IMG/VR virus record: IMGVR_UViG_3300033141_006329
Location: 124,001 to 188,000 of that record
DNA: 64,000 bases
Direction: 5' to 3' (one strand)
This document shows, piece after piece, positions 18,957-52,676 of this stretch (the first letter of the stretch is position 1; every line of letters starts with the position of its first letter). A program made the translations under genes and the position numbers. The notes under the pieces are model-generated. The model ran no database searches, had not been told where the DNA came from, and saw nothing but the letters and a program-made list of their open reading frames with translations.

Positions 18957-19310
18957 TCAGATAATCACTCCTAAGTTAAATAGATCCATAAGACAATCAT
19001 CCAAATCAATTGTTAAATAATAATTAGACTTTATATTTATAATTAATATATATAAATCCTCAATAGAGTTCAACAACAAAAATTTATCAACTATATTAAT
19101 TAGTTCTAATATCATTCTTCTATCTCTCGTAATAATGTAAATATCTATATATTGCATTATTCGTATAGTTGAAATAATCCCGACTGTTAATGTAACATCA
19201 TTATAATCATAGAGCGCATCGATTCTATCGTAAACATAAACAACATGACCATATTCATCATGTAGTTCTTGCCTGTGTATCTGACAATCCCATTTCCACT
19301 TGCTATTCAT
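18957..19310 (-). CDS. Array family protein
   Basis: Ends IDLDDCLMDLFNLGVII. Confidence 0.6.
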   Translation of the reverse strand: MNSKWKWDCQIHRQELHDEYGHVVYVYDRIDALYDYNDVTLTVGIISTIRIMQYIDIYIITRDRRMILELINIVDKFLLLNSIEDLYILIINIKSNYYLTIDLDDCLMDLFNLGVII

Positions 19311-19322
19311 AAAAATATCTCC

Positions 19323-19757
19323 TTATAATTCAGCTCCTTCCTCAAGTAATATATCAAGTGCATTGTGAACATTTATATGATTGGACGATTGCTCTCGCAC
19401 TAATCCAAAAAGAAGTTCAAAACCATAATGCTCAATATATTTTTCTGCTATTTCCATTAGTACTAAAGAAAATCTATCATCAGAAATTTCAAACCATATT
19501 CCATCAGAACTCCTATTAGAACATTTCCAAATAATTATAGCCCACAAAAATCTTCCAGTACTCATAAATTTATATTTTTTTACAATAATCCAGTTATCCC
19601 CTATATTTTTACTTATACCACCTTTATAAATGTCTCCAATATTTTTATTTATATCATACTTAAATTTTTCATCAAAACATTTTATCACATCATACCCTAA
19701 GAGTGACATCAAATATAGTTCCCAACCAAGTTTTTCATAATCTCCTATATCTACCAT
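19323..19757 (-). CDS. Array family protein (YEKLGW subfamily)
   Basis: DYEKLGW...WFEIS.D.F..VL; ends LDILLEEGAEL. Confidence 0.7.
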   Translation of the reverse strand: MVDIGDYEKLGWELYLMSLLGYDVIKCFDEKFKYDINKNIGDIYKGGISKNIGDNWIIVKKYKFMSTGRFLWAIIIWKCSNRSSDGIWFEISDDRFSLVLMEIAEKYIEHYGFELLFGLVREQSSNHINVHNALDILLEEGAEL

Positions 19758-19759
19758 AA

Positions 19760-20152
19760 TTATAATTCAGCTCCTTCCTCAAGTAATATATCAAGTGTAT
19801 TGTAAACCCTTATACGGTAGGATGATCGTTTTCGCAGTAACTCAAAAAGAAGTTTAAAATTATAAGGTTCAATGTAGTTCTCCATAACATCCACTAGTAC
19901 CAAAGAAAAATCATCATTAGAAACTTCAAACCATATTGTACTAGAATGTTTTCTAATGCGGTCCCAAATAATTATGCCCCAACAATGTTTTCCGGTATCC
20001 CTAAATTTATATTTTCTTATAATAACCCTAAAGTGCTCGGTGTACGCACTTCCTTTTTCAAAATGCCCACCGTAACATTTTTCTAGATCGATTAAATCAT
20101 TAAACGATTTTTTTCTCCAGCCAAGTTTTTCATAATCTCCTAAATTTATCAA
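19760..20152 (-). CDS. Array family protein (YEKLGW subfamily)
   Basis: Close paralogue of 19323..19757 with identical 38-bp 3' end. Confidence 0.7.
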   Translation of the reverse strand: MINLGDYEKLGWRKKSFNDLIDLEKCYGGHFEKGSAYTEHFRVIIRKYKFRDTGKHCWGIIIWDRIRKHSSTIWFEVSNDDFSLVLVDVMENYIEPYNFKLLFELLRKRSSYRIRVYNTLDILLEEGAEL

Positions 20153-20200
20153 AACTACCCCCTTCCTCAGTTCACAGTAGGATTAAATATCCTTTATGAT

Positions 20201-20515
20201 TTACATAATTTGCCCTTCATCTACCACACTTATCAATAATTCATCCTCATTTGTAGTTACCTCCCCTAGATTTAATATAACATCTATCATACTAGGACCA
20301 TATCGATTTATAGCTTCTGATATAATTATTTTCAATTCTTCTCTAAAGGATGATGTAGTATACAAACGAGTAGTTCCATCATAATAATGATTTAAAATAC
20401 CCCAAAAACCTTCATTATAAAATGTATGAAACAACTCTCTAAAGTCATTATGATATTCATCTAAATTGTCCCAACAATTCTCCCTAAAATTATGCACAGT
20501 AATCCATTTATTCAT
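20201..20515 (-). CDS. Array family protein
   Basis: Paralogue of 24562..24894 (LDEY....ELFHTFY, SFREELKII). Confidence 0.65.
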   Translation of the reverse strand: MNKWITVHNFRENCWDNLDEYHNDFRELFHTFYNEGFWGILNHYYDGTTRLYTTSSFREELKIIISEAINRYGPSMIDVILNLGEVTTNEDELLISVVDEGQIM

Positions 20516-20901
20516 AAGATAATCCCTTCCTCAAGTAATATATTAAGAGCATCGAGAGTAGTTACATGAGGGCTTATATTATAATCATTGTCCATTGGGA
20601 TATTTCGTATTGTATGCACAAGAGATTTGAAACCATAAATATCAATATAGCTTTCCACTAATTCCAGTAGTACTAAAGCAAAATTATCTTTTGATATTTT
20701 AAACCATACGGCATCATTATTTTTTGTAACATTAGTTATAACTATACCCCAACAAATATTATACTCAGGTCCATATCGAAAGCCCCATTTTCTTACAGTA
20801 ATTTTTCTATCATTGTTAAATTTTTTCACTGTATCAACATACGATGAATAATCATTATATACAGCAACCCAGCCTAAATTCTTATAATCTCCTATATTCA
20901 T
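20512..20901 (-). CDS. Array family protein (YEKLGW subfamily)
   Basis: MNIGDYKNLGW; ends LNILLEEGIIL. Confidence 0.7.
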   Translation of the reverse strand: MNIGDYKNLGWVAVYNDYSSYVDTVKKFNNDRKITVRKWGFRYGPEYNICWGIVITNVTKNNDAVWFKISKDNFALVLLELVESYIDIYGFKSLVHTIRNIPMDNDYNISPHVTTLDALNILLEEGIIL

Positions 20902-20921
20902 AAAAACTATCCTTCCATAAT

Positions 20922-21164
20922 TTACCCATCCAAATCTGCATCCAGGTAATCGCCAACCCACCCAATTATAAATACAAGAACAATTGCAAATACCGTAAAG
21001 AAAATACGGTTTGTCATCAGATCCTGAATCATATATCTTTCATAACCACTCTCTACCATATATACAAAGCGACTATAATGCCAAGGAACCCACCAACATA
21101 ATAACCCTATATCTACAAACAATGCTCCCAACTTCCCCTTATGTCTATTTAGAAATTTTATCAT
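20922..21164 (-). CDS. Small membrane protein
   Basis: Two hydrophobic segments. Confidence 0.5.
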   Translation of the reverse strand: MIKFLNRHKGKLGALFVDIGLLCWWVPWHYSRFVYMVESGYERYMIQDLMTNRIFFTVFAIVLVFIIGWVGDYLDADLDG

Positions 21165-21499
21165 TAGTTTTCCTCCAATATTTCATACCAACCACACACC
21201 TCAGCTCTTTCTTGAGCCACAGTTTGTGACATGTCCTCTAACTCCTCATTTGTTATACTATCATCAATCTCAACATCTTCATATTCTTTTTGGTGACCTC
21301 TCCAAGAATACCAATATCTTACTTTCATCTTAATTATCTCCTTACATATGTCCAAGTGCGTAAAATATCCCTGACAATACTGTGGCAATCAAAGCAATAA
21401 ACAACCCATCAATATCCTGTGTCCCTATAGAAGCAATAGCTCCACACATCAAACACCCTATATTTAACATTACCCAATTATTCATTATTTTTCCTCCAG

Positions 21500-21961
21500 T
21501 TAAATAATCATACCACTCAAATCTCCCAATAACATATCAATATCCAGCCTCATAATATTATCGTCGCAACCTATAATATCAGAAACACAATCAGCATTCT
21601 CCATCTTCCTATCTATATAATTCATGATGTCATTTCCTAGTTTTTCCTTCAACGGGAAATGAGAAAGGGTTAATATGTTATCTAAAAATATATTAATCAT
21701 AGCATAAGAGGAGGAGTGATAATAGATACCATTCCTATGTATACAGATATGTACCCCACCTCCTTTTCGTCTTTCTTCTTCTAAAAAGAATATACCCACG
21801 CCGTAGATATTTATAGTGATATACCAATGTTGTGAGATACAAGCTTCCCACACACCAACACGGATATTTTTCCACTCTAATTTATCACGCCGTTTCCTAT
21901 GTACAAATTCATTATCCATAAATTTTCCATCCCTAACTACAGGGAATTCCATCTTCTTCAT
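21500..21961 (-). CDS. Array family protein
   Basis: Ends LDIDMLLGDLSGMII. Confidence 0.55.
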   Translation of the reverse strand: MKKMEFPVVRDGKFMDNEFVHRKRRDKLEWKNIRVGVWEACISQHWYITINIYGVGIFFLEEERRKGGGVHICIHRNGIYYHSSSYAMINIFLDNILTLSHFPLKEKLGNDIMNYIDRKMENADCVSDIIGCDDNIMRLDIDMLLGDLSGMII

Positions 21962-22254
21962 GATTTATTTTCCTTATAGTAATTCTCGATTCTTCTTTTC
22001 TCATCTCTTTCTTTTTCCTCTTCCAAAAATACCTTATCAATAACAGCATCTATACCCTTCTCGATTATACTTCTGACCATTTCGCTATCCTGTCCTTCTA
22101 TTTCTATTATAGACTGTTCTCTTAAAGTTGCCAGCCATCTTTTTCTTTCTTCATATGCACCTGCATCCCAAGCGTCCTGCGCTATTGCCTCTGATCCTCG
22201 AAATCTCCAAGTTAAATTACCTATCCATTTATTCCACCATTCTTTAAATTTCAT
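21958..22254 (-). CDS. Hypothetical protein (not array family)
   Basis: FKEWW...AQDAWDAG; coupled ORF. Confidence 0.55.
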   Translation of the reverse strand: MKFKEWWNKWIGNLTWRFRGSEAIAQDAWDAGAYEERKRWLATLREQSIIEIEGQDSEMVRSIIEKGIDAVIDKVFLEEEKERDEKRRIENYYKENKS

Positions 22255-22619
22255 AATTCTACCCCTCCCTCAATCATAGAGTCCAGAAAGTTATCTTCTA
22301 TCATCTTATGTATAAACTTGAATATGTTTTTTGTTGGTATAAGGTAGATATTATAATCATCTCCTTCAATATATAAAACTCTGTTTAACATATCCAAACA
22401 TTGGACCAAAGCTTCACTGAGTGGAGTATATTCTGGAGAACAACCATTTGTCAATTGGTCAAATAAACCTTCAACTGTTCCAATTATATGATCCTCAATT
22501 TCCTTCACGTGTCCATCTTCAACATAATATTCAATCTCCACCTTAATAATTTCGTTCGCAAGCAATAGAGGTATCAATTCTTCAAAGTCTAATCCTTCAA
22601 CATTAACTATTGTTGGCAT
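22251..22619 (-). CDS. Hypothetical protein with array-type tail
   Basis: Ends FLDSMIEGGVEL. Confidence 0.55.
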   Translation of the reverse strand: MPTIVNVEGLDFEELIPLLLANEIIKVEIEYYVEDGHVKEIEDHIIGTVEGLFDQLTNGCSPEYTPLSEALVQCLDMLNRVLYIEGDDYNIYLIPTKNIFKFIHKMIEDNFLDSMIEGGVEL

Positions 22620-22685
22620 ATTATCTCCTTTTCTTTTTTGAAAACATCACCTGAAAAGTCAAACCAACCTAACGTTCTGTATTTT

Positions 22686-23054
22686 TCAAGATTCATAACC
22701 AACTCCTTGTTCATTATACATACTAAAGATATATTCCACATCGCACCTACTTATAAGAAATTTCTCACTTGCTATATCATAATGTTTTAATATTTTTAAG
22801 AGTGCGTTGAACCCTTTGTTTCTTATAACATGATCTGCTATTTTCATTAATTCCAATCTAAATTCATTACTAAAAATATCAAACCATATTGCTCTACCTT
22901 GGCATGTATGTGATTTCTCGCCTACAATTCCTATATATTTTTGAAGAGCAGATTTTCTTATCCACATCCAATCAGTTGTTGTGCGAAATGATAAATCTTC
23001 AAAACCACATTGTTCCCAACCCCTCATTCTATATTTTTCAAAGTCCACAACCAA
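22686..23054 (-). CDS. Array family protein (FEKY..GW subfamily)
   Basis: DFEKYRMRGW...AIWFDIF. Confidence 0.65.
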   Translation of the reverse strand: MVVDFEKYRMRGWEQCGFEDLSFRTTTDWMWIRKSALQKYIGIVGEKSHTCQGRAIWFDIFSNEFRLELMKIADHVIRNKGFNALLKILKHYDIASEKFLISRCDVEYIFSMYNEQGVGYES

Positions 23055-23427
23055 ACCCCCCCCACATTATATTGATTAATAGATCAATATTAATATCGAC
23101 ATTGTTATACCTTTGCATATAATGATCTAGTATATCTGTAACCATTTTTATATTTCCTCTCTTCTCAGACTCTTCGATAATATCTAATAAAACCAAACCA
23201 AACTTATCAGTTCCAATATCAAACCACATGGAACCAGTTGTCGGCCCATCACTTTTCCCGCTAAGAATACCCCATTCCGGAATGTTGTTCAATTTAAATT
23301 TTCGCAGTAGTATCCAATGATTACCAATTACTTTTATCGCATTTATCCTCTGAGATGCTGTTTTGAAATTACTTAGAGCCCAGCCTTTCTTAGCATACTG
23401 TTCAGATATTATATCCTCTAAATCCAT
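23038..23427 (-). CDS. Array family protein
   Basis: YAKKGW...HWI...WGI...WFDI. Confidence 0.65.
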   Translation of the reverse strand: MDLEDIISEQYAKKGWALSNFKTASQRINAIKVIGNHWILLRKFKLNNIPEWGILSGKSDGPTTGSMWFDIGTDKFGLVLLDIIEESEKRGNIKMVTDILDHYMQRYNNVDINIDLLINIMWGGFGCGL

Positions 23428-23822
23428 ATCGTACCCTCCTCTAAAATTATATCACATACTTTTTCTGCACATACTTTGATAGGATTTGTTGGTATACATC
23501 CTTCTTGTTTGGGATTTTTATTGCGATTCCATATTAAACCTACAACCTCTGAAGTATTATTCTTCTGTTCAGCATCATCTACTATATCCATCAGGATATG
23601 AGGAAAGTCATTATTACTCATATCAAACCATATTGCATTACCATTATACTCGTCGTATAATGGACCTACAATGATGCCCCAATTTGGTATATTTCTTACA
23701 ACAAACCAATGATGACCAGTTTCTTTTACCATATCTAGATTATCAGGATTATATTCTTCAGGGTCATCTTCATTAAGTTTGTTTATTTCCCACCCCTTTT
23801 TCTCATATTTTTCAAAGTTCAT
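23418..23822 (-). CDS. Array family protein (FEKY..GW subfamily)
   Basis: MNFEKYEKKGW; ends IILEEGTIWI. Confidence 0.7.
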   Translation of the reverse strand: MNFEKYEKKGWEINKLNEDDPEEYNPDNLDMVKETGHHWFVVRNIPNWGIIVGPLYDEYNGNAIWFDMSNNDFPHILMDIVDDAEQKNNTSEVVGLIWNRNKNPKQEGCIPTNPIKVCAEKVCDIILEEGTIWI

Positions 23823-24204
23823 TGCAACCCCCTTCAAATATTATATTGATTGTTTTGTTTAGGTCACTATTTATATTGCAAACCTTTATATTATAAGTCT
23901 TTTTATTATAATGAGTTTGAATATAATCTATTAGTGTTTTAATATCTTTAACATTGTAATCAACAACAATATTAAATAAAACTGAAATAAAATCCTCTGT
24001 TAATATATTAAACCATATTGTGACAGTAGTATCCTCTTTAATTTTTCCAATAATAATACCATATTTATAATGTCCATCTAATCTTCCATTTAATTTTCTT
24101 GCAATAACCCAATGCTCTCCAATTATGGTTGATATGTCTATACTATTAATAAACTTATTTTTGCACCCATCCCAACCCTTCTCAATGTATTTTTCAAAGT
24201 TCAT
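23812..24204 (-). CDS. Array family protein (FEKY..GW subfamily)
   Basis: MNFEKYIEKGW; ends IIFEGGCNEL. Confidence 0.7.
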   Translation of the reverse strand: MNFEKYIEKGWDGCKNKFINSIDISTIIGEHWVIARKLNGRLDGHYKYGIIIGKIKEDTTVTIWFNILTEDFISVLFNIVVDYNVKDIKTLIDYIQTHYNKKTYNIKVCNINSDLNKTINIIFEGGCNEL

Positions 24205-24565
24205 AACCATCTCCTTCGAATATTAGATCACACAATTCATCTGTATTTATATCGATACAATGAAGAGAACTACTCATAGAAACTAAGTCTATCAGCCCCC
24301 TAAGAGTATTTTCTTCCTCATGATCTATAATTATATCCAACAAAACAGTGAGGAAATTTTCAGAAGAAATCTTAAACCATATCGATCTTCCAGATCCTAC
24401 ACCTGTCCTACCTATAATTATACCACACTCATCTCCAGTACTAATTCCCCATATCTTTCTTACAATAACCCAATGACTTTCAATTGTTTTTGATATGGTT
24501 ACTGTATTACTGGTAATGTAATCCCGACTGTTCCACCCTAATTTCTCATATTTTTCAAAGTTCAT
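24194..24565 (-). CDS. Array family protein (FEKY..GW subfamily)
   Basis: MNFEKYEKLGW; ends LIFEGDGYEL. Confidence 0.7.
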   Translation of the reverse strand: MNFEKYEKLGWNSRDYITSNTVTISKTIESHWVIVRKIWGISTGDECGIIIGRTGVGSGRSIWFKISSENFLTVLLDIIIDHEEENTLRGLIDLVSMSSSLHCIDINTDELCDLIFEGDGYEL

Positions 24566-24894
24566 AATTGATAACCTCCTTCTAATATCCTCATAAGAGT
24601 ATCATCAATATCTAATTCTATAAATAACTCACATCCAGATAAAAATTCTATGGGGAAATCGTCTAGTTTTTCCACCATTTCAGATAAAATTATCTTTAGT
24701 TCTTCTCTGAATGATAATGGTGCTACTATACATAAATTACCACTATAATTATAATCCTTTACACCCCAGCATAATTTGGTTTTCCACCTACTATAAAATG
24801 TGTGAAACAATTCTTTATGATCCTTATAATATTCATCTAAATTTCTACAGTTTCCACAATAATCATTTATTTTCATCCACCCATTCATTTTCAC
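24562..24894 (-). CDS. Array family protein
   Basis: Ends LDIDDTLMRILEGGYQL. Confidence 0.65.
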   Translation of the reverse strand: MKMNGWMKINDYCGNCRNLDEYYKDHKELFHTFYSRWKTKLCWGVKDYNYSGNLCIVAPLSFREELKIILSEMVEKLDDFPIEFLSGCELFIELDIDDTLMRILEGGYQL

Positions 24895-24897
24895 CTC

Positions 24898-25263
24898 CTA
24901 TAGATTTATTCCTTTATTATATGACTCCACACAAAATCTATCTATATCAAAATTGATATAATTATAAAAATATTTTCCAGATGATATGAAATCGCACCCT
25001 GACAATTGTATAGGATTATTAATGATATTGTATAACTTATGTAATACTCCTTTATCAACATAATCTTGAACTAACCTCTTTAAAACCTTTTCAAAATTCA
25101 AACCATATCCATCAAACACAATAGAAGGAGATAGTGGATTCCAATTCCCCTTACATATAGATATATCCCAATATTCAAAATGAGATGCCCAACAAATACG
25201 AATCCCATATTCCTTGTAATTTGTTTCATGCCACAAATATCTAGTATTTGTCCAGACTAACAA
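24898..25263 (-). CDS. Array family protein
   Basis: W.I.I...IVFD....F..VL core. Confidence 0.6.
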   Translation of the reverse strand: MLVWTNTRYLWHETNYKEYGIRICWASHFEYWDISICKGNWNPLSPSIVFDGYGLNFEKVLKRLVQDYVDKGVLHKLYNIINNPIQLSGCDFISSGKYFYNYINFDIDRFCVESYNKGINL

Positions 25264-25604
25264 TTTGCACCCCCCTCCAATATAATATCCAATGTATCTC
25301 GCATGCTCATCCTAGTGTAACCATAATCGTCATGTAGGTTCACATAGTGAATCCGGTTCAGTAATTCGGCACACCCAAATCTCTCGATATAATCACTTAA
25401 TACATCAAGTAAAATATATTTGAGTTTGTTACCAGTATCCATAAAAATCATAGCTTCCCCACCCATAGATATTTTTCCAATAGATAATATCCAACCATTC
25501 CAACAAGAAGCTTTGGAAATACATATCCAATATTCATCTTTTTTGATATGAGTCCCTGCATAATCCGTAATCCAAGTTAATCCTATATCCTCATTTGATA
25601 TCAT
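25257..25604 (-). CDS. Array family protein
   Basis: Ends LDIILEGGANC. Confidence 0.6.
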   Translation of the reverse strand: MISNEDIGLTWITDYAGTHIKKDEYWICISKASCWNGWILSIGKISMGGEAMIFMDTGNKLKYILLDVLSDYIERFGCAELLNRIHYVNLHDDYGYTRMSMRDTLDIILEGGANC

Positions 25605-25999
25605 AATATTAATCCTCCCATATCGAACATACTATTTAGTATATCTTCCTCAGCCTCAATATTAATATATTGCGCATTGTTGGAGTTGAGATCGCTAATC
25701 ATCTCAAAAAGCTCTTCGAGCTGATTATTTGTTATACACTTGTCCACGATATTCATGAGAGTATCAAAAAAGTTTTTACAACACAACATGAAAGTTATAG
25801 TATTGGTGGAGTTGGTCTGCCACTGATCTTTATATAATGTTAATCTCCAAGCGTCCTTTCCCATATACCATCCAATCTGCATAATATATCTTCCGTGTAT
25901 TTTGTTATAATTCCCTGCACACTCATTCCAACGATCTGTCATATTTCTTATCACTTCTTCGCCCAAATTCTTAAATAAACCCTTCTTTCGAATAATCAT
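25601..25999 (-). CDS. Array family protein
   Basis: Ends ILNSMFDMGGLIL. Confidence 0.6.
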   Translation of the reverse strand: MIIRKKGLFKNLGEEVIRNMTDRWNECAGNYNKIHGRYIMQIGWYMGKDAWRLTLYKDQWQTNSTNTITFMLCCKNFFDTLMNIVDKCITNNQLEELFEMISDLNSNNAQYINIEAEEDILNSMFDMGGLIL

Positions 26000-26220
26000 A
26001 ATATTAATCCTCCCGCAGTAAGTAAATCTAATAGATCCTCAATATGAATACCTATGAAATGTGTTCCACCATTCTTTACGAATTCCGTTCTTTTAGTACG
26101 ATCCGAATTCAATATATCTTTAATCTTTTCTGAGTTTTCAGGTGTAGTTGTCATATCAAAATGCAATGTAGTACCACCATAAAAAACGAAGGTCATATCT
26201 TTAACCCATTTTTTAAACAT
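25996..26220 (-). CDS. Short array family protein
   Basis: Ends IEDLLDLLTAGGLIL. Confidence 0.55.
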   Translation of the reverse strand: MFKKWVKDMTFVFYGGTTLHFDMTTTPENSEKIKDILNSDRTKRTEFVKNGGTHFIGIHIEDLLDLLTAGGLIL

Positions 26221-26539: not shown

Positions 26540-26541
26540 GT

Positions 26542-27350: not shown

Positions 27351-27487
27351 AATTTCTCCTCAATAAATCTCACCTTTATTATTAATCAACTGTATCATTG
27401 TCTCTAATTTATATGGAAAATCTACCATATCCTTTCGTGCTAAACCGTCCCAAATTCTATTTTCTTCTTTCCTCCATTCTTTTTCGG

Positions 27488-28151: not shown

Positions 28152-28461
28152 CTCCTACTCCTTTCACTAATAATATTTCTAATATATCGTCTTTTACTTC
28201 TATATATTTACAAGACTCATCATTCACAATAGGTTCAATTCCGCACTTATTAAAAAATTCAGATAATACTGTTTTTATAACAACTTTTATCTTAGGTGAA
28301 AATATTTTAAATACAAGAATACAATAATTATTGTGTGGAGTTACAACATTCCAACCATCATTATCTGGAAAGAGATTAAATTGTTTTACATCATCCTTAT
28401 AATATCGATCCGTTGTATTATAAGAACAAATAGTATTAGTAATAGATTTCCAACCTGTCAT
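28132..28461 (-). CDS. Array family protein (Y.TTD subfamily)
   Basis: GW......SYNTTD; ILEILLVKG tail. Confidence 0.65.
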   Translation of the reverse strand: MTGWKSITNTICSYNTTDRYYKDDVKQFNLFPDNDGWNVVTPHNNYCILVFKIFSPKIKVVIKTVLSEFFNKCGIEPIVNDESCKYIEVKDDILEILLVKGVGDDRWLE

Positions 28462-28781
28462 AATTCTTCTCCCTCATTTATAATTGTGATTAGTATATCT
28501 AGTTCCAATTTTATACTTGGATAACTATTCATAAACAGATATAGGCTGTCTAATCCATGTTTTTCAATATATTCTGATATAATTGTTTTTATCACTTCTC
28601 TAAAAGATAATAGACCAGTATAAAATTTAATATTGCCTAAGTTTATATGTTTTGATAACAACCAACGATATTCGGTAACATATAGGTATAGAAAATATTT
28701 TTCACCGATCCAATATTTATCACAAGCCGTGTATCTAAAAACTTTATCTGTTAATTCGAGCCAACCGTTGCTATAACTCAT
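28458..28781 (-). CDS. Array family protein
   Basis: Ends LDILITIINEGEEL. Confidence 0.65.
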   Translation of the reverse strand: MSYSNGWLELTDKVFRYTACDKYWIGEKYFLYLYVTEYRWLLSKHINLGNIKFYTGLLSFREVIKTIISEYIEKHGLDSLYLFMNSYPSIKLELDILITIINEGEEL

Positions 28782-29094
28782 ATCCTTTCTCCATCAAACT
28801 GTTTATATTCTCATCGATATTGATTTTCACAACAATTTTATGCAGATTTCTCATCATCATTGTTACACCTTTAAAATCATGAAAAATTTGATCCCCTATA
28901 GCATCACGTATTTCATACTTAAAATCTATGGATGATTTGGGAGGAATCTTGAACCAGAAAAGATTTATAATACAACCGCCTCCTCTAAATACTTCACGTA
29001 GGCTCACACACCAGTAAACATAATCAACCGCAGAGATAGATAGGGTGTGGTCGCCATAATTAAAGCGTATACCATTCTCACATTTTTTCCACAT
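28771..29094 (-). CDS. Array family protein
   Basis: MWKK..NG; paralogue of 30207..30554 (E.RD.IG.QI..DF). Confidence 0.65.
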   Translation of the reverse strand: MWKKCENGIRFNYGDHTLSISAVDYVYWCVSLREVFRGGGCIINLFWFKIPPKSSIDFKYEIRDAIGDQIFHDFKGVTMMMRNLHKIVVKINIDENINSLMEKGYEL

Positions 29095-29455
29095 ATTGCG
29101 CCCCTTCCTCTGACATATTATAAAATAAAGATTCCACACTCATGTCGATATTAATAATAATACCATTGGGATTATGTGTTTTTACAATATTTAACATTTT
29201 TGCACGGAATGTTTCGACTGATTTTGATTTCAAATTCTCATATATAATATCCAACAAAATAGGAATAAAATCATCATTTATATTTTTGAATATAATAGCA
29301 ACGCCACTATAATCTTCGTATCCAATAGCTATTCCCCAACCAGATCCTAATCCATACCTGATTGCTATCCAATATGCCCCTACTCTTGTGCCCATCCCAG
29401 TATGCCCATATTCTACAGACCAGCCTTCCCTTACATAACACGAAATATCATTCAT
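29078..29455 (-). CDS. Array family protein
   Basis: GWGIA.GY.D..G.AIIF shared with 30555..30917. Confidence 0.65.
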   Translation of the reverse strand: MNDISCYVREGWSVEYGHTGMGTRVGAYWIAIRYGLGSGWGIAIGYEDYSGVAIIFKNINDDFIPILLDIIYENLKSKSVETFRAKMLNIVKTHNPNGIIINIDMSVESLFYNMSEEGAQYVEKM

Positions 29456-29844
29456 GTCCTTCTTTCCCTCCCCAATAAAATGTTTCCAATGTATCCTCCA
29501 ATCTCACAGCAATAAAATCTTTATTATTTTTTATAAAGTTATAAAATTTATCATAATTTTTTTCAATAGCCTTCTCAACAATAAGTATTATTTCGCCAGG
29601 AAATTTATCATCTGAAATTTCAAAATCAATACCACCAATAAAAGTGTTACCATTGTCTAATTTCAAACGAAGGGATCCATCAGAATTACTTTCCTCCCAA
29701 AAATCTAAAAAAATACCACCCATCCGTCCACATGATGCAATAATTATTCCCCTCATAAACAAGATCATCACCCTCAGCAGGGCTCATCTGCGCTTTTCCT
29801 TCCTTTATATGAGCATAATATTCATACATCTCATTTGAGTCCAT
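29448..29844 (-). pseudogene. Array family gene apparently split by a frameshift in a T7 run
   Basis: Removing one base from 29707-29713 joins MDSNEMY...DGWY to LDFWEE...FYWGG in one 131-aa ORF. Confidence 0.45.
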
Positions 29845-30220
29845 AACAACCTCCCTCAAAAAATTCTTGTATAACCAAATCAAATACATCATATTTGTAA
29901 TCATAAGATGTATAAGGAGCAATTGTCTCATATAAATCCTCTACAGATCCAGACCTTAAAAATTCTGTCATTAGATCCAATAATATATACATGAAATCAT
30001 AATCATTTGTATTAAATACGATATATTTGCAACCAAAAGCGAATTCAGATCCTCGTATAGTCCTCTTAATATTTGATGTCATTATAGCAATCTTGGTGGG
30101 ACCAAAACTATTGACATCATACATGACCCCTATAGTATATGGATTTTTTTCATAAAAGAATCTTTCTCCATGATCCTTAACGGACCAACCAAAATCAATA
30201 TAATGTTTAACATTGTTCAT
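29831..30220 (-). CDS. Array family protein
   Basis: HYIDFGW; ends IQEFFEGGCYGLK. Confidence 0.65.
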   Translation of the reverse strand: MNNVKHYIDFGWSVKDHGERFFYEKNPYTIGVMYDVNSFGPTKIAIMTSNIKRTIRGSEFAFGCKYIVFNTNDYDFMYILLDLMTEFLRSGSVEDLYETIAPYTSYDYKYDVFDLVIQEFFEGGCYGLK

Positions 30221-30554
30221 ATGACCCTCCCTTCAATAACTCATTCAAACAATTATAGATATCAACATGTATAACCTCATTATAATTATCCTTCATAATA
30301 TCTAGAACACTTTCAAAATCCTGATAAATCTGTTTCCCTATAATATCTCGTAATTCGCATTGAAAAGAATTAGTCATATAAGAAGGCATTACAAATTTTA
30401 TATAAACCATCATCGAGCAACTACCCCTACTATACCAATGCCGATGTTCCAGATATACGCTCTCTTTATATCTATCTTTTTCATATGTTTGCGATATGAC
30501 TATCTCATCTTTATCATATGCGAACCACATGCCATTATAGAATTTTTCCCACAT
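30207..30554 (-). CDS. Array family protein
   Basis: Ends LNELLKGGSYEQC. Confidence 0.65.
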   Translation of the reverse strand: MWEKFYNGMWFAYDKDEIVISQTYEKDRYKESVYLEHRHWYSRGSCSMMVYIKFVMPSYMTNSFQCELRDIIGKQIYQDFESVLDIMKDNYNEVIHVDIYNCLNELLKGGSYEQC

Positions 30555-30917
30555 TTATCTTCCCCTCTCTAATATATCAAAAAGAAATTTATCTATATCA
30601 ATTTTTATATAAACAGTACTACCTATACAAAGATCATTTAGAACTATATCTATCAATGTGGATTCTAACTTATGTAGTGTATTTGTCTGTATATATTGTT
30701 CTACAATATCCAATAATAGAGGAATGAAATCAGTACCAACTTTCTCAAATATTATAGCAAGTCCTTTACAGTCTGTATATCCCATAGCAATTCCCCAGCC
30801 ACAACAATTAACTCCACATATCACAGCCACCCATATATCATCAATATTTTTATACATACCCACCCCATGCCTACTATCAAATATCCAATCATTTCTGCGA
30901 TATTGTTCTAGATTCAC
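30555..30917 (-). CDS. Array family protein
   Basis: Ends IDIDKFLFDILERGR. Confidence 0.65.
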   Translation of the reverse strand: MNLEQYRRNDWIFDSRHGVGMYKNIDDIWVAVICGVNCCGWGIAMGYTDCKGLAIIFEKVGTDFIPLLLDIVEQYIQTNTLHKLESTLIDIVLNDLCIGSTVYIKIDIDKFLFDILERGR

Positions 30918-31216
30918 AATTCACCTCCCTCAGCCATAAAATTCAAAATACTTTCATCGTCCATAAACAGACCACCACCATCATAATTCATAATATTGTT
31001 GATATTCAAATTCACATCATCTATAGCCTTGCGTAAAATATTTTCAAGTATATACATAAAATCATTGTGATATTCTTCATTCATAAGAAAAACAAAACGT
31101 ACTAAAAACGTAATACCATCAGATATATCCAAACCAGGATAATAACCAGTGAAACAATTCCTCAATCCTATATTTATCTGATATTTTTTATAAGGTGTAT
31201 ATATGTTACTAATCAT
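30914..31216 (-). CDS. Array family protein (YPG subfamily)
   Basis: YPG..I.DGI, M.EEYH..FM.IL and MDDESILN shared with next ORF. Confidence 0.7.
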   Translation of the reverse strand: MISNIYTPYKKYQINIGLRNCFTGYYPGLDISDGITFLVRFVFLMNEEYHNDFMYILENILRKAIDDVNLNINNIMNYDGGGLFMDDESILNFMAEGGEL

Positions 31217-31560
31217 TATAATTTCTCCCAATATCCTTCACTCATTATACAATTTAAAATACTTTCATCATCCATCCACATTTTACACAACTCTTTACTA
31301 TTCATCTCATGGATCAAAATCTTCATATTAATATCTATAGAATTAATAGCTTTTTGTAGAGTTGAATTGAGTATATCCATAAATTCAGGATGATATTCCT
31401 CATCCATATAGAAGACAGGAGTAGCTATAATTTCAATACCATCATCTATATACATTCCAGGATATTCAGGACCAGCACAATCTTTCATACATATGTGTAT
31501 ATTGTATTTGCCATATTTTTTACTTTCGTATTTTTCTATCTCATATTCGTACGATCTCAT
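31216..31560 (-). CDS. Array family protein (YPG subfamily)
   Basis: Tandem paralogue of 30914..31216. Confidence 0.7.
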   Translation of the reverse strand: MRSYEYEIEKYESKKYGKYNIHICMKDCAGPEYPGMYIDDGIEIIATPVFYMDEEYHPEFMDILNSTLQKAINSIDINMKILIHEMNSKELCKMWMDDESILNCIMSEGYWEKL

Positions 31561-32308
31561 TATAATCCTCCTTCTTAGGATACCAATTCCATATAGCTTC
31601 TTCTCCCGATCTCTCAGGCAGATATATACCATCCCTTTTATCCAGCCTAACATATTTACATAAAAAATCAACTACCCATCTTCTATCACCTCTCTTATTT
31701 ATTACCTTATTCCGTTCAACTCGCCATACGGCCCCCTCCACCTCATCAATGGCTCCATGGAATCCATACTTACCTAATCTTACCATTATATCAGCCACAG
31801 ATATAGCCCCACCAACATGAAGGATATGAGGAGTTATGAAATCGAATTGTCCTACTCTTGATTTTAAATCATTAAAAAGAATGCGCTTATAATTGGAAAA
31901 TAAATCAAATGTAACAAATGGTTCATGCGTTAGATTATATCTTGTACTATGAGCTTGTGCTAACCACTCTCCGCAAATCCTCTCATCATTATTAAGAAGC
32001 TCATCAAAGCGAGTTCTATTCCTCTCAACCCAATCAGCAAAAAATCGATGTTGTTTATAATCAGAGCTAACGGCTAAATAACCTGCTCTTATGAGAGGGT
32101 ATATTATTCCATCCTTTTTTGCTACACCGACATTTGTTCCGTCCAATTTTTCCAGGACAGTTATTAAATCATGTTCGTCTCTGGTCTTTTTTATAGCTAT
32201 ATTTCCTTGTCTCTCAGGACAATGATGATCACCGTATCCTGTTCTACTGTTGGGTAGATGCGGAATGTGACCATAACATTTAATTCCTAACGGTTTTTTA
32301 GGTCTCAT
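31541..32308 (-). CDS. ATP-dependent RNA ligase family protein
   Basis: Nucleotidyltransferase motifs EKLDGTN, ICGEW, FVTFD, EGAVWR, CKYVR. Confidence 0.8.
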   Translation of the reverse strand: MRPKKPLGIKCYGHIPHLPNSRTGYGDHHCPERQGNIAIKKTRDEHDLITVLEKLDGTNVGVAKKDGIIYPLIRAGYLAVSSDYKQHRFFADWVERNRTRFDELLNNDERICGEWLAQAHSTRYNLTHEPFVTFDLFSNYKRILFNDLKSRVGQFDFITPHILHVGGAISVADIMVRLGKYGFHGAIDEVEGAVWRVERNKVINKRGDRRWVVDFLCKYVRLDKRDGIYLPERSGEEAIWNWYPKKEDYNEIVRI

Positions 32309-32600
32309 ATTGTTTCCCTTCATACATAAAATCAATATCATGATATTCAAAGTAACTATATTTTTCCAATACATTTAAAAATCCACTCTTATCACCCACA
32401 TCAACCAGAGCCTCAATAAATTCTTCCGCCTCCTTAACATCAAAGTTTTTTAACATACCAATGTGTGTTTCGGTCGTTTCTCTCATATCATGATATATAA
32501 TATAACAACCAGGATGATTACATAAAATAACAGATAATTCCGAATTCTCCTGACACGATACCTTATCTTCCCAATGACTATTGATAATATTTGAGTTCAT
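32298..32600 (-). CDS. Array family protein (PGC...LKNFD subfamily)
   Basis: Ends LEKYSYFEYHDIDFMYEG. Confidence 0.7.
   Translation of the reverse strand: MNSNIINSHWEDKVSCQENSELSVILCNHPGCYIIYHDMRETTETHIGMLKNFDVKEAEEFIEALVDVGDKSGFLNVLEKYSYFEYHDIDFMYEGKQYET
32317..32366. repeat. 50-bp repeat, copy 1 of 3 (others 32610-32659, 33919-33968)
   Basis: CCTTCATACATAAAATCAATATCATGATATTCRAAGTAACTATATTTTTC. Confidence 0.9.
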
Positions 32601-33094
32601 AATTCAACTCCTTCATACATAAAATCAATATCATGATATTCGAAGTAACTATATTTTTCCAATATATATTGAAATCCTCCTCTACTGCACCCATTGATTA
32701 ATATCGTGATAAATTCTTCCGCTTCCTCAACATCAAAGTTTTTAAGTATACAAATATGTCTTTTCCCTGAGTATAAAATATAATGAGTCAATAACCAGCA
32801 ACCAGGATATTTGTTCAAGAAGACAGATAATTCTTTGTTCTCACAATACATTTTGTGAGTTTTCCAACTACCAAATCCTACCGCTTTCATAATAACTTCC
32901 CCCTCATTCATAATAATCTCAAATAACTTCTCATAATCAATATTCACAGAATGCATTTGATAATTAGTATTATTAAAATCATCTCGTTCTATAGTGAACA
33001 TCATCTTTACTGCACCACTACCGACTTTCCAATTTCGAATAACCATATCAAATCTCCCTTCAATAATATCATTAACTAATGTAACATTACACAA
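32597..33094 (-). CDS. Array family protein, apparent in-frame fusion of modules
   Basis: Internal tails DIIEGRFD and IIMNEGEVI precede a PGC...LKNFD module. Confidence 0.6.
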   Translation of the reverse strand: MCNVTLVNDIIEGRFDMVIRNWKVGSGAVKMMFTIERDDFNNTNYQMHSVNIDYEKLFEIIMNEGEVIMKAVGFGSWKTHKMYCENKELSVFLNKYPGCWLLTHYILYSGKRHICILKNFDVEEAEEFITILINGCSRGGFQYILEKYSYFEYHDIDFMYEGVEL

Positions 33095-33476
33095 GTTGAT
33101 ATCCCTTCCCCGAAAACCCTTCTAATAACTCATAGATTTTTATCCTTACTGTATGTGGTGATACAGGATGGTGATCATATATTAGGTTGTCAGTTTCGTA
33201 AGGTTTTAAAGTCTGTTCAGACATTAGAAATATAAGATGCTCGTTAAAAGCTTTGTATTTTTTATCCGATAACAATATATCAAATACCAATACCTTACGA
33301 GGGAGGGTATTATGATTAGTATAAAATCTAATTGTTGGAAATGTGTTATTAACCATCATCCAAATCTCATAATATAAATCCTGTAATACATAAGCACCTA
33401 TAGGGCAATATTTCCATGTTACACCATTAATATTAATACTCTTCTCACAGTTATCAGATCCCGATCGATTAATCAT
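33087..33476 (-). CDS. Array family protein
   Basis: INGVTW; ends IYELLEGFSGKGYQLV. Confidence 0.6.
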   Translation of the reverse strand: MINRSGSDNCEKSININGVTWKYCPIGAYVLQDLYYEIWMMVNNTFPTIRFYTNHNTLPRKVLVFDILLSDKKYKAFNEHLIFLMSEQTLKPYETDNLIYDHHPVSPHTVRIKIYELLEGFSGKGYQLV

Positions 33477-33909
33477 ACTGACATCCTCCCTTATAAAAAA
33501 TATCAAAAAGAATATGTAGAGAAGTATGTGCATTATATACTTTTCTGACCCCAGTAAAATCAAAACGATCTATAGGAAATCTATCAATATGCACTAATGC
33601 ACTTCGGCCTATTTCCAATATTTCCCCATGAAACTTGTCATTAATTGGTTTGAATAATATGGACAATATTGTAGTTCTTGGAGATGGCTCATCTTGATTA
33701 TAACCCCATTTTCTTGTAGGATTTACCTTAGAGATATCCAACATCGATATGAATATATACACTATATGTGGTCTGCATACAATACCTGCCTCTAATGTGT
33801 AACCATTGTATTTTCTCTGATATCTGCCAGAAGTTTTGTTCCATTTTATCTCACCCTCTTTTAAGGTCAGATAAGAATAATCAAATATATCAACATACAA
33901 ACTTTTCAT
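33469..33909 (-). CDS. Array family protein
   Basis: Ends ILFDIFYKGGCQYD. Confidence 0.6.
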   Translation of the reverse strand: MKSLYVDIFDYSYLTLKEGEIKWNKTSGRYQRKYNGYTLEAGIVCRPHIVYIFISMLDISKVNPTRKWGYNQDEPSPRTTILSILFKPINDKFHGEILEIGRSALVHIDRFPIDRFDFTGVRKVYNAHTSLHILFDIFYKGGCQYD

Positions 33910-34880
33910 AATTCAACTCCTTCATACATAAAATCAATATCATGATATTCAAAGTAACTATATTTTTCTAGTGTGCGCATGAATTGTTGTTCACCACCGA
34001 CTGCAAACAATGCTACAACGAAATCCTTTGCTGTTCTGATGTCAAAGTTTTTTAACACAGCAATATTTAAAAGAGATGTTGAACTTAGTCGCTTGGTATA
34101 TGTCAACTCAAAACAGCCAGGATATTTGTATAAATTAATAGATAATACGCGATGGTCGTAACTCGTGCAATTATCATACCACTCATCGCCAAATGCCGTG
34201 CCCCCGACACTCTTAAGCTTTTGAAGTTTACCTTCCTTAGTCAAAGATAATAATTTGGCAAATGTATTTACATCGTACCGACCATTAAACGTTTCTATAT
34301 TTTTTAATTTCGAAAGAGGTTCATAAGGAATATCTAATCTCTTATTGAAATCAACACTAAGATATTCTAAATTTTCTAACTTGCCTAGAGTATTCACAGA
34401 AGTTGCCGCACCACCATACAAATAAAGATGTTTTAACGACCTAAGATTTTTTAAGAAAGACATATCCATAATCTCACCGTTATTTAAAGATAAATATAGC
34501 GATTGTAATTGATTCAATTTCCCAATGTGCGACACACAACCAGAACAATTTGTAATTTTCAAAAAAGTCAGATTTGGAAGTAAAGATAAGAAAGGTTTAT
34601 CCCCTAAATCGAAATTTCTCATGGTGAGAGATTTTAAATTACTTAAAGTATTTATATTACTGAGATCCCATTTATCAATGCAATAATTTGCCCCTGATAT
34701 ACTCAATTCTGTCAGAGATTTAAAATATGGTAATATATTCGATAAATCTCTATTATTGCATAATCCAATGCTATCTATATGTTTCAAATGAATAGGTAGG
34801 ATGGTTCCATTTTTTGATAACCCGTTCTTTTTTCTTATCAACCTTCTTGCACTAAGTCCTTCAATGTTTAAACTCTTCAC
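33906..34880 (-). CDS. Leucine-rich repeat protein fused to array-family module
   Basis: LxxLxxLxL repeats, then YPGC...LKNFD...YHDIDFMYEGVEL. Confidence 0.8.
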   Translation of the reverse strand: MKSLNIEGLSARRLIRKKNGLSKNGTILPIHLKHIDSIGLCNNRDLSNILPYFKSLTELSISGANYCIDKWDLSNINTLSNLKSLTMRNFDLGDKPFLSLLPNLTFLKITNCSGCVSHIGKLNQLQSLYLSLNNGEIMDMSFLKNLRSLKHLYLYGGAATSVNTLGKLENLEYLSVDFNKRLDIPYEPLSKLKNIETFNGRYDVNTFAKLLSLTKEGKLQKLKSVGGTAFGDEWYDNCTSYDHRVLSINLYKYPGCFELTYTKRLSSTSLLNIAVLKNFDIRTAKDFVVALFAVGGEQQFMRTLEKYSYFEYHDIDFMYEGVEL

Positions 34881-35200
34881 AATTCAAATCCTCCCTCATT
34901 CATAATCTCTAATACGTCATATAGATCATAATGATCCCCGTTTTTCCTGTTCATGACATCAACCAAATTCTTTATGCTTCTTGTTTCCATAAATGAGGAT
35001 AATATTTTGGCTAATTCGTTGTCAAATCTTTTCGGCATATTGTAAAAATATAGTTTAAGAAATCTTCCACCCCTACTCAGATATACAAGTCTATGATTTG
35101 AAAATGTAAATGACCCAACCCATAAAGAACTTTTCCGATTATTACTTGATATCATATCAGAATGTTTTCCCACACTGCTTTCCTTCCAAATCAATTTCAT
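34877..35200 (-). CDS. Array family protein
   Basis: Ends LYDVLEIMNEGGFEL. Confidence 0.6.
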   Translation of the reverse strand: MKLIWKESSVGKHSDMISSNNRKSSLWVGSFTFSNHRLVYLSRGGRFLKLYFYNMPKRFDNELAKILSSFMETRSIKNLVDVMNRKNGDHYDLYDVLEIMNEGGFEL

Positions 35201-35565
35201 ACCCAGACTCCCTCAAAATAAAATTGTTGTACAAGATGTTCTACAATACATACAGATATTCTTGTATTTGTTTTAATATTTTTTATTAACTCAAGATTCT
35301 CCTCGATAATTATAAAAGGTTGTAGTATATCCATTATCTCACAGTAGAATATATCATTTCCAATATCAAATAAGAAGTATGCACTAGTACTACCATCATA
35401 ACTTATTCTTGCCCACCATGTTTCAGGGGATATTGTACTTAAAGATATGGTAGCATTTACATTAAATTTAGAATTGGTTCTATATGTAATATAACGTTTC
35501 CTGCTATTGTTATTACTATAAGATTTGATTGTCCATGTTATACCATTTCGTTTGAAACGATTCAT
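35197..35565 (-). CDS. Array family protein (first of array)
   Basis: NGITW...WW..I...FDIGND.F; ends QQFYFEGVWV. Confidence 0.6.
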   Translation of the reverse strand: MNRFKRNGITWTIKSYSNNNSRKRYITYRTNSKFNVNATISLSTISPETWWARISYDGSTSAYFLFDIGNDIFYCEIMDILQPFIIIEENLELIKNIKTNTRISVCIVEHLVQQFYFEGVWV

Positions 35566-35722
35566 AAGGTCTCCCAAAAAAATTAAAACTAATAATCCGT
35601 AATTTCTCATTAAAAGAAATTCCCCGCCACGATAATGACAGGGAAATAATATATTATCACATGATATGATATAAAAGGGCTCTACCCCTGAATAGAACCC
35701 TGATTATAAACAGATTGAAATA

Positions 35723-52584: not shown

Positions 52585-52676
52585 TTTTATTTCCTCCATT
52601 TTTAAATTTTTTAAAACCACCTTTATATATCTGTTTTTTAATGAGTTCCTCCTATTCAATCCAAACCCTTTTATAA

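What the first reader, a model, noticed from the sequence alone, without database searches (positions are those of the whole stretch)
18957..35565. 16.6-kb array of about 40 divergent paralogues sharing a C-terminal helix-EGG tag (top candidate system)
Seen: most ORFs are 100-150 aa with a similar pattern (early W, beta strands W-x-I-x-I, then F-x-I-x3-F-x3-L-x2-I) and end in [IL]D-x2-L-x2-hydrophobic-[ED]-G-G/x-x2-L. At least seven subfamilies occur in tandem runs, with about 7 more members at 59.3-64 kb. EGG often doubles as the SD of the next overlapping gene, but two controls argue for a protein-level role. 19323..19757 keeps LLEEGAEL although the next gene has its own GGAG. Unrelated coupled genes in the same operons (21958, 31541, 60520, 61998) lack the tail. 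Inference: a library of variable binding domains with a common docking or targeting tail, such as adaptors to one host or phage hub (protease, RNAP) or diversified anti-defence proteins. Processing at the Gly-Gly or at L-x-E is possible but speculative.
Basis: partly seen in the sequence, partly recalled or inferred. Interest (0 to 1): 0.85.

Follow-up and report, generated by a model that had tools for sequence, protein, structure and literature searches.

The report
Giant paralogue family in jumbo phage
A T4-like jumbo phage gives about a fifth of its genes to one orphan family of small proteins, and their shared C-terminal "tag" is the domain's last helix overlaid on the ribosome-binding site and start codon of the next gene.

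Summary
Window 18957-35610 (minus strand) has 45 ORFs. Thirty-two belong to one HMM-defined family, and 8 more carry the same tail.

Across the 223-kb record the family has 64 members, 19% of ORFs and 10% of the DNA. They lie in translationally coupled tandem arrays. There is no Pfam or PHROG match and no convincing fold match. Outside this phage, only a close relative and one other fragment carry it.

The tail has three layers:
- **Protein level:** a beta-strand, an amphipathic helix (D-x-L-L-x-x-phi-phi) and a Gly cap. Codon identity there is the same as in the protein body.
- **RNA level:** the E-G-G codons (GAG GRA GGA GG) form the next gene's Shine-Dalgarno site, shown by strong synonymous-codon bias.
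- **Overlap:** the last residues (L, I, or Y-E) come from the overlapping start codon (TTATGA, ATATGA).

Conservation runs through the whole domain, so the tail is not a detachable tag in the main family. Some very divergent small ORFs keep only the tail, so a docking role is not excluded. Orthologues evolve fast but under purifying selection.

Most likely this is an accessory, probably early-expressed family of binding or inhibitor proteins, expanded by repeated tandem duplication. Function is inferred, not shown.

The parts
18957..35610 (-). Main tandem array: 45 co-directional ORFs. 32 are HMM-defined family members and 8 more carry the tail. Most are translationally coupled by start/stop overlaps.
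24194..24565 (-). Representative member (123 aa) used for the structure model: helix, five-stranded antiparallel sheet, two helices, strand 103-106, helix 108-116, disordered last 7 residues.
   Evidence: pLDDT 83, pTM 0.73, 64-sequence alignment A2
24562..24582 (-). Example junction. Codons E-G-G-Y-Q-L-stop of gene 24562-24894 read GAA GGA GGT TAT CAA TTA TGA. GAAGGAGGT is the SD of the next gene, and its ATG overlaps the stop as ATGA.
19323..24565 (-). Largest subfamily within the range (7 members: 19323, 19760, 20512, 23038, 23418, 23812, 24194), with N-terminal x-Y-E-K-x-G-W.
26213..27202 (-). Three-member subfamily (26213, 26542, 26873), about 40% identical to each other.
28771..30917 (-). 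Duplicated two-gene cassette: 30555+30207 pair with 29078+28771.
31541..32374 (-). Unrelated gene inside the array: RNA ligase (PF09414). No tail.
32298..34880 (-). Divergent subfamily ending in Y-x-D-I-D-F-M-Y-E-G (32298, 32597, and the C-terminal ~95 aa of 33906-34880). The last is fused to an N-terminal leucine-rich-repeat domain. Family members 33087 and 33469 also lie in this span.
   Evidence: (W234 and G321 invariant)
35611..35701 (-). Cassette upstream of the array: two terminator-like hairpins flanking a TGTGATAAT extended -10-like element. It resembles the promoter-early stem-loop cassettes of T4-type phages.
   Evidence: PMC2839356
59344..64000 (-). Start of the second array (members 59344, 59643, 60960, 61370, 61672, 62315, 63806). 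It continues beyond the window to genome position 193.5 kb.
55641..56639 (-). Second LRR protein, with a C-terminal domain of the divergent subfamily. A third lies at 51769-52737.

Best explanation
This is a lineage-specific multigene family in a T4-like (gp23-type capsid) jumbo phage. It has at least 64 members, and probably about 90 if tail-only relatives and the unseen part of the ~306-kb genome are counted.

Each gene encodes a small, mostly acidic, cytoplasmic alpha+beta domain of about 100-130 aa. The genes sit head-to-tail in long polycistronic arrays built by repeated tandem duplication of single genes and two-gene cassettes. They are translated by coupling.

The conserved 'helix-EGG tag' is a composite, dual-coding element with three layers:
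1. The last beta-strand (phi-D-phi-D) and last amphipathic helix (D-x-L-L-x-x-phi-phi) of the domain, ended by a Gly cap. This layer is conserved as protein.
2. The purine-rich codons around that Gly (GAG GRA GGA GG) are the Shine-Dalgarno site of the next cistron. This layer is conserved as RNA.
3. The 1-12 trailing residues are whatever the out-of-frame overlap with the next start codon encodes.

Every duplication copies this junction, so it recurs in all members.

Shown: the family, the coupling, the dual coding, fast evolution under purifying selection, and restriction to this phage lineage.

Inferred: the proteins are accessory, probably early-expressed binders or inhibitors of host or defence proteins, diversified in an arms race. 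The three LRR fusions would be versions with an added binding module.
For: Family.

Tandem origin: the best paralogue is the adjacent gene in 19 of 64 cases, against 2.0 expected. Duplicated cassettes appear.

Coupling: 44 of 64 family genes overlap the next start, 20 of them by the 4-nt NTGA overlap. Mean SD duplex energy of family-gene starts is -9.5 versus -7.9 kcal/mol for other genes.

RNA-level constraint:
- The anchor Gly codon is GGA or GGG in 55 of 64, against a 48% background (p 4e-10).
- Glu at position -2 is GAG 25: GAA 5, against a 30% GAG background (p 2e-9).

Protein-level constraint:
- Identical residues in the tail helix use the same codon in 52% of pairs, against 53% in the body.
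- The hydrophobic positions follow an amphipathic spacing.
- About seven members whose tail is not the next gene's SD still keep the Gly.
- Non-family coupled genes encode their embedded SD as K-E, E-E or R-R. The SD core runs through a Gly codon in 19 of 50 of them, against 36 of 48 family genes (p 2.6e-4).

Fold: pLDDT 83, with the tail modelled as a paired strand plus helix. Conservation is spread over the domain.

Real genes: orthologue dN/dS is 0.13-0.73 (pooled 0.37), against 0.06 for the capsid protein and 0.10 for the sheath.

Fast turnover: family orthologues are 61-90% identical while the capsid protein is 98.6% identical, and array content differs between the two phages.

Orphan status:
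- No Pfam or PHROG match.
- Only 38 hits among 1.84 billion representatives, 30 of them the phage's own proteins.

Context: a PeSL-like cassette lies upstream, and an RNA ligase and endonuclease-like genes are interspersed.
Against: - No expression, interaction or phenotype data exist; no sequencing run could be listed.
- Early timing rests on a weak promoter-like match.
- Fold searches give only noise-level hits: best Z 6.6 to an Rhs immunity protein, then PsiB, CdiI and AcrF1 at Z 5.4-5.7. The 'inhibitor' idea is therefore analogy only.
- I could not inspect model coordinates, so packing of the tail helix against the sheet rests on DSSP and pLDDT alone.
- Between orthologues the tail is not more constrained than the body (omega 0.38 vs 0.37).
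- About 14 small ORFs beyond the record's end and several inside it match the family only in the tail (hhalign 16 columns, E 2.7e-4). This is more easily explained if the tail has a function of its own.
- The members not coupled to a downstream start also use purine-ending Gly codons, so they do not cleanly separate protein from RNA constraint.
Confidence: 0.6

Rival explanations
1. The tail is a functional docking or targeting motif (an amphipathic helix plus Gly) shared by a library of variable binding domains. It brings them all to one hub such as a host protease, RNA polymerase, chaperone or phage assembly, or lets them pair with one another. The SD overlap is a secondary economy.
For: - The tail is the only segment shared with several very divergent mini-families and with the LRR-fused subfamily.
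- The helix is conserved at the amino-acid level without extra nucleotide constraint.
- A variable-length loop precedes the tail strand in many members.
- The Gly is kept where coupling is absent.
Against: - In the main family the tail is no better conserved than the core residues.
- It is modelled as an integral strand plus helix.
- The true C-terminus varies in length and sequence.
- No candidate hub was identified.
- Orthologue omega in the tail equals that of the body.
- The tail-only ORFs may simply be members that have diverged past HMM detection.
Confidence: 0.25
2. The tail is only a nucleotide signal: SD plus spacer plus overlapping start, inherited through duplication. It has no protein-level meaning.
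For: - Strong synonymous bias at the E-G-G codons.
- The terminal residues are explained by ATGA or GTGA overlaps.
- The last gene of the array (18957) has lost the Glu before the Gly: its tail reads N-L-G-V-I-I instead of E-[E/G]-G.
Against: - The 8-10 residues upstream of the SD are conserved as an amphipathic helix with ordinary codon variation.
- Non-family coupled genes place SDs in other reading frames.
- Uncoupled members keep the Gly.
Confidence: 0.05
3. The proteins are packaged or processed cargo. By analogy with T4 internal proteins, they would be cleaved by the prohead protease at phi-x-E in the tail, or cleaved after Gly-Gly like ubiquitin-like proteins or double-glycine leader peptides.
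For: - The phage has a gp23-type capsid gene next to the array.
- Many tails read [I/L]-x-E-[E/G]-G.
- From background knowledge, T4 internal proteins are variable and share a short targeting peptide; the topic appears in the papers listed, which were not read.
Against: - The T4 targeting peptide is N-terminal, whereas this motif is C-terminal.
- The second Gly is present in only about a third of members.
- The fold is not a beta-grasp.
- Cleavage would remove only a few disordered residues.
- No virion proteomics is available.
Confidence: 0.05
4. The array is decaying duplicated DNA, and its ORFs are no longer functional genes.
For: - Some fragments exist: 27183 (55 aa, tail only) and 25996 (74 aa).
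- Gene content differs between close relatives.
Against: - All 13 orthologue pairs have dN/dS below 1.
- The ORFs are intact and tightly packed, with strong SDs.
- Core residues are conserved across paralogues of 25-47% identity.
Confidence: 0.03

Closest known systems
ORFan clusters in the hyperplastic regions of T4-type phages, with promoter-early stem-loop (PeSL) cassettes (Arbiol et al. 2010, PMC2839356)
   Same: - T4-like phage with long runs of small, non-core, fast-turning-over genes of unknown function between conserved modules.
- A hairpin-promoter-hairpin cassette lies at the head of the array.
- Gene content differs between phages whose structural proteins are nearly identical.
   Different: - Here the genes are paralogues of one family rather than unrelated ORFans.
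- They are joined by overlapping stop/start codons, not each flanked by its own PeSL.
- The recurring junction is a coding tail plus SD.
Genomic accordions and viral multigene families (poxvirus K3L amplification; T4 tifA amplification, bioRxiv 10.1101/2022.04.14.488369; gene duplication in giant viruses, reviewed in PMC13359090)
   Same: Tandem amplification of accessory genes followed by divergence, with rapid gain and loss. The proposed driver is conflict with host defences. Duplication also contributes to large genome size.
   Different: - These copies are old (47% identity at most), not recent amplicons.
- 64 or more members of one family, 10% of the DNA, is on the scale of eukaryotic giant-virus families. 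I found no phage precedent in the papers searched.
- No target is known.
T4 internal proteins sharing a capsid targeting sequence
   Same: A set of variable small proteins in a T4-like phage that share a short conserved peptide.
   Different: - The T4 peptide is N-terminal and is removed by the prohead protease.
- Here the motif is C-terminal, is part of a homologous domain, and overlaps the next gene's translation signals.
Polyimmunity loci and small alpha+beta inhibitor proteins (Rhs/CDI immunity proteins, PsiB, anti-CRISPRs)
   Same: Tandem arrays of divergent small alpha+beta proteins. The weak structural neighbours of the model are of this kind.
   Different: - Z scores (5.4-6.6) are in the range expected for unrelated folds.
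- There is no sequence similarity and no toxin partner.
- The arrays are in a lytic-type phage, not a bacterial locus.
Translationally coupled operons with an SD embedded in the upstream coding region
   Same: ATGA-type overlaps and an SD inside the preceding gene, also seen in many non-family genes of this phage.
   Different: In the family the SD is always read in the same frame, through the Gly that ends a conserved helix. One element therefore serves both protein and RNA in 64 paralogues.

Membership tests
Any Pfam or PHROG family | Significant profile match | tested here: not met
   46 proteins were scanned. Only the LRR part of one protein matched Pfam. PHROG matches were isolated single hits, none shared by the family.
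   phmmer single-linkage gives 45 proteins and the iterated HMM gives 64, with alignments spanning profile positions ~2-108. Conserved columns are spread along the domain.
Single homologous paralogue family | Common fold | tested here: inconclusive
   One confident model was built from the joint alignment. The model of the LRR-fused divergent member has the same order of strands and helices but pLDDT of only 55-61. Tail-only ORFs align only over 16 columns.
T4-type hyperplastic-region gene cluster | T4-like core genes; small non-core genes between conserved modules; content varies between close relatives | tested here: met
   The Gp23 capsid protein (PF07068) lies next to the array, along with sheath and ligases. 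Array content differs in a relative with a 98.6% identical capsid protein.
T4-type hyperplastic-region gene cluster | PeSL cassette (strong early promoter plus stem-loop) flanking individual ORFans | tested here: not met
   One PeSL-like cassette lies at the head of the array. Genes inside the array overlap and have no intergenic cassettes.
T4 internal proteins | N-terminal capsid targeting sequence ending in [L/I]-x-E; presence in virions | not testable with these tools
   The motif here is C-terminal. No virion proteome is available.
Ubiquitin-like or double-glycine processed proteins | Beta-grasp fold or N-terminal leader; invariant Gly-Gly at the cleavage site | tested here: not met
   The fold is helix, five-stranded sheet, then helices. 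The residue before the anchor Gly is Gly in only 18 of 64 members. The motif is C-terminal.
Toxin immunity / anti-defence inhibitor folds (TriTu, CdiI, PsiB, AcrF1) | Structural match clearly above background | tested here: not met
   Best Z is 6.6, and the tool states that a typical best Z for unmatched models is 7-8. Foldseek E-values are 0.007 or worse in PDB, AFDB and BFVD. Atlas TM is 0.52 or lower.
Translational coupling element | SD 4-10 nt upstream of a start that overlaps or abuts the upstream stop; synonymous-site bias toward SD bases | tested here: met

The most novel reading that the evidence does not exclude
The phage carries a combinatorial library of roughly 70-90 small recognition domains. 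All end in the same amphipathic helix-Gly motif, which plugs them into one common partner: a host machine, a phage hub, or one another. It would be a phage-encoded adaptor repertoire built on a shared docking peptide, and that peptide is also hard-wired to the translation start of the next library member.
Probability: 0.2. Interest if true: 0.85.

Novelty: new variant of a known kind. Interest (0 to 1): 0.55.

Why it matters
- **Scale.** Gene-family expansion is an accepted route to large genomes in giant eukaryotic viruses and is only sketched for phages (PMC13359090). This phage puts at least 64 genes and 10% of its DNA into one orphan family.
- **An unexplored family.** It has no Pfam or PHROG match and no fold neighbour. 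It evolves several times faster than the virion proteins yet stays under purifying selection, which is the usual signature of host-interaction or counter-defence genes.
- **A clean dual-coding example.** The junction shows one short element constrained both as protein (helix cap) and as RNA (SD plus start) across dozens of paralogues. This is a caution for motif hunters: C-terminal 'tags' in coupled operons can be partly translational signals.

Tried and rejected
- **Phage DNA and protein searches.** Megablast of the region, tblastn of one member and tblastn of a 27-aa tail against 50,697 phage records gave no match.
- **Flanks of related phages.** The flanks fetched around the sheath gene in 12 related IMG/VR loci (44-80% sheath identity) contain no family member. 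The family is seen only in the same phage on a 306-kb JGI contig, in a close relative from run SRR3715733, and on one 519-bp ENA scaffold.
- **Solved structures.** A profile search against PDB sequences returned nothing below E 0.1.
- **Fold searches.** PDB, AFDB clusters, BFVD, the wide VIA search and the ESM Atlas gave no convincing neighbour. Leads to p32, YbjN, WGR and immunity proteins were rejected as noise.
- **Concerted evolution.** I tested whether the tail is kept similar by gene conversion. Codon identity in the tail is not raised overall; only the pair 19323/19760 shows it.
- **Extra constraint in orthologues.** The tail is not more constrained than the body (omega 0.38 vs 0.37).
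- **Other attempts.** Sequencing-run look-ups listed nothing. A T4 late-promoter motif scan was uninformative.

Full report
**Setting**

The window is bases 124001-188000 of a 223,370-bp IMG/VR virus record with 33% GC. CheckV rates the record 71% complete. It corresponds to the first 223 kb of a 306,137-bp JGI metagenome contig.

The phage is T4-like. A Gp23-type capsid gene lies just upstream of the array, a tail sheath gene lies at 52712-54448, and an NAD-dependent DNA ligase lies at 35723-37516. No GenBank phage is close: the best sheath hits are about 25% identical. A close relative (capsid protein 98.6%, sheath 96% identical) is present in run SRR3715733, an anoxic methane-cycling metagenome.

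**The observation**

Between 18957 and 35610 there are 45 tightly packed minus-strand ORFs. All-vs-all phmmer on a greedy set of 333 ORFs from the whole record links 45 proteins into one cluster. Iterating an HMM brings this to 64. The six-frame genome tool independently found 53 at E<=0.001.

- Thirty-two members lie in the stated range.
- Eight further ORFs there carry the tail but fall below the HMM threshold.
- Seven members lie at 59.3-64 kb, and that array runs on to 193.5 kb of the record.
- A third array lies at 218-223 kb.

The family makes up 19% of ORFs and 10.1% of the DNA. A regular expression for the tail hits 56 of 333 ORFs, against a mean of 5.8 (max 15) after shuffling the C-terminal 40 residues. 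It hits 2 of about 410 ORFs in loci of more distant relatives. At least seven subfamilies are visible, and duplicated two-gene cassettes occur.

**What the tail is made of**

Printing the last 11 codons and the downstream bases of all 64 members shows a recurrent design...GAR GGA GGN nnn nnn TTA TGA.

- The purine run is the Shine-Dalgarno site of the next gene, with typical spacing of 4-8 nt and duplex energies of -8 to -15 kcal/mol.
- The terminal Leu or Ile is the TTA or ATA that precedes TGA, so that ATGA holds both the stop and the next start.
- The common Y-E-L ending is T-ATG-AAC-TTT-GA, the next gene starting ten bases before the stop.
- Forty-four of 64 members overlap the next start, 20 of them by four bases. 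Fifty of 64 have it within +8 nt.

Synonymous sites confirm selection at the RNA level. The anchor Gly codon ends in a purine in 55 of 64, against 48% genome-wide (p 4e-10). Glu two codons upstream is GAG 25 times and GAA 5 times, against 30% GAG genome-wide (p 2e-9).

**What is not explained by the SD**

- The eight to ten residues before the Gly form an amphipathic pattern (D/E, x, L, L, x, x, phi, phi) preceded by phi-D-phi-D. Where two paralogues share a residue there, they use the same codon in 52% of cases, against 53% in the rest of the protein. That conservation therefore acts on the protein.
- Non-family genes that are equally coupled encode their embedded SD as K-E, E-E, R-R or L-E-E. 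The SD core passes through a Gly codon in 19 of 50 of them, against 36 of 48 family genes (p 2.6e-4).
- About seven members whose tail cannot be the next gene's SD still keep the Gly. These are members with a gap of 9 nt or more where the next gene has its own SD, or where no downstream start exists. They also keep purine-ending codons, so this control is suggestive only.

**Fold**

An AlphaFold2 model of 24194-24565 was built on the 64-member alignment. It has pLDDT 83 and pTM 0.73. Its order of elements is a short helix, five antiparallel strands, two helices, a strand (103-106, the phi-D-phi-D motif), a helix (108-116, the tail helix) and a disordered end.

Conservation is spread over the domain. 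W11, Y16, W39, F64, F71 and L75 carry as much information as L112 and G119. In the main family the tail is therefore the last strand-helix of the domain with a Gly cap, not a detachable peptide.

No fold neighbour is convincing:
- Foldseek E-values are 0.007 or worse in PDB, AFDB clusters and BFVD.
- ESM Atlas TM scores are 0.52 or lower.
- The wide VIA search has a top Z of 6.6, within the range the tool reports for unmatched models.

The top rows are small inhibitor-type proteins (an Rhs immunity protein, PsiB, CdiI, AcrF1), which I treat only as a lead.

**Limits of the 'one domain' reading**

A subfamily ending in D-I-D-F-M-Y-E-G aligns with the main profile only over the helices and tail (hhalign E 0.0017). 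It comprises 32298, 32597, two genes at 194 kb of the record, and the C-termini of three LRR proteins. It keeps the two family hallmarks, an early Trp and the tail Gly, as its only invariant columns. Its model has the same order of elements at low confidence.

Beyond the end of the record, the 306-kb contig shows about 14 more small ORFs in alternating mini-families. Their tails fit the motif well, but their bodies are not recognised by the HMM; hhalign aligns only 16 tail columns (E 2.7e-4). Either these are members diverged beyond detection, or the tail is maintained for a function of its own. This is why I leave the docking model at about one in four.

**Evolution**

- Paralogues are old, at most 47% identical. 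The nearest paralogue is the adjacent gene in 19 of 64 cases, against 2.0 expected.
- Against the SRR3715733 relative, family orthologues are 61-90% identical with dN/dS of 0.13-0.73 (pooled 0.37). The capsid and sheath proteins have dN/dS of 0.06 and 0.10. The tail (0.38) is not more constrained than the body.
- Genes have been gained and lost within the arrays.
- The profile finds only 38 cluster representatives among 1.84 billion proteins. Thirty are the phage's own, seven come from the SRR3715733 relative, and one comes from a 519-bp scaffold from another sample.

**Mechanism proposed**

Repeated tandem duplication of genes and two-gene cassettes built polycistronic arrays. Each unit ends with a helix-Gly cap whose codons recruit the ribosome for the next unit. 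This design keeps all copies expressed without intergenic signals and is copied with every duplication.

The head of the main array carries a hairpin, promoter-like element and hairpin cassette, like the PeSLs of T4-type phages. The array also contains an RNA ligase, and putative homing endonucleases lie nearby. The proteins are mildly acidic, with a median pI of 4.96.

I infer, but have not shown, that they are accessory, probably early-expressed binders or inhibitors of host factors or defences. The LRR fusions would be variants with an extra binding module. The family would be the long-term product of accordion-like amplification.

**Verdict**

This is a new, lineage-restricted protein family and an unusually large expansion for a phage. 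I class it as a new variant of a known kind and score its interest at 0.55.

Noticed in passing
window 31541-32374 (-): An RNA ligase gene (PF09414) sits in the middle of the paralogue array. It is coupled to its neighbours but lacks the tail.
   Followed up: partly
window 17385-18830, 54535-55644, 57611-58621 (-): Zinc-finger-rich proteins with DUF559 / DUF7487 / REase-like C-termini (putative homing endonucleases) flank the arrays. 54535 and 57611 are paralogues.
   Followed up: partly
window 35611-35701 (-): Two strong terminator-like hairpins bracket a TGTGATAAT element between the DNA ligase and the first array gene. This resembles T4-type promoter-early stem-loop cassettes.
   Followed up: partly
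L022:7078-8154 (JGI contig, just beyond the end of the 223-kb record): A TnpB-like gene (Cas12f1-like_TNB) lies inside the continuing array. The IMG/VR record is labelled 'provirus' and ends close to it, so the 223-kb record looks like a trimmed part of a ~306-kb phage contig.
   Followed up: partly
window 45384-46373 (+): An unrelated 329-aa protein on the other strand ends in L-L-D-G-G-L-F, with the G-G codons serving as the next gene's SD. Its orthologue in L008 ends the same way. This is an independent example of an SD read as Gly-Gly.
   Followed up: partly
window 63351-63575 and 63592-63813 (-): Two adjacent paralogous small hydrophobic proteins (73-74 aa), both ending in L-K-F-W. They are conserved at 58-65% identity in the relative L006.
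   Followed up: no
window 19323-19360 and 19760-19797 (-): The last 36 nt of two neighbouring paralogues are 35/36 identical although the proteins are only 47% identical. This suggests local gene conversion or a recent junction exchange.
   Followed up: partly
window 51769-52737, 55641-56639, 33906-34880 (-): Three leucine-rich-repeat proteins carry the divergent family domain at the C-terminus. LRR proteins are uncommon in phages.
   Followed up: partly
L022:14057-16081: The same phage encodes a CCA-adding / poly(A) polymerase-family enzyme and a DnaJ-like protein next to the third array.
   Followed up: no
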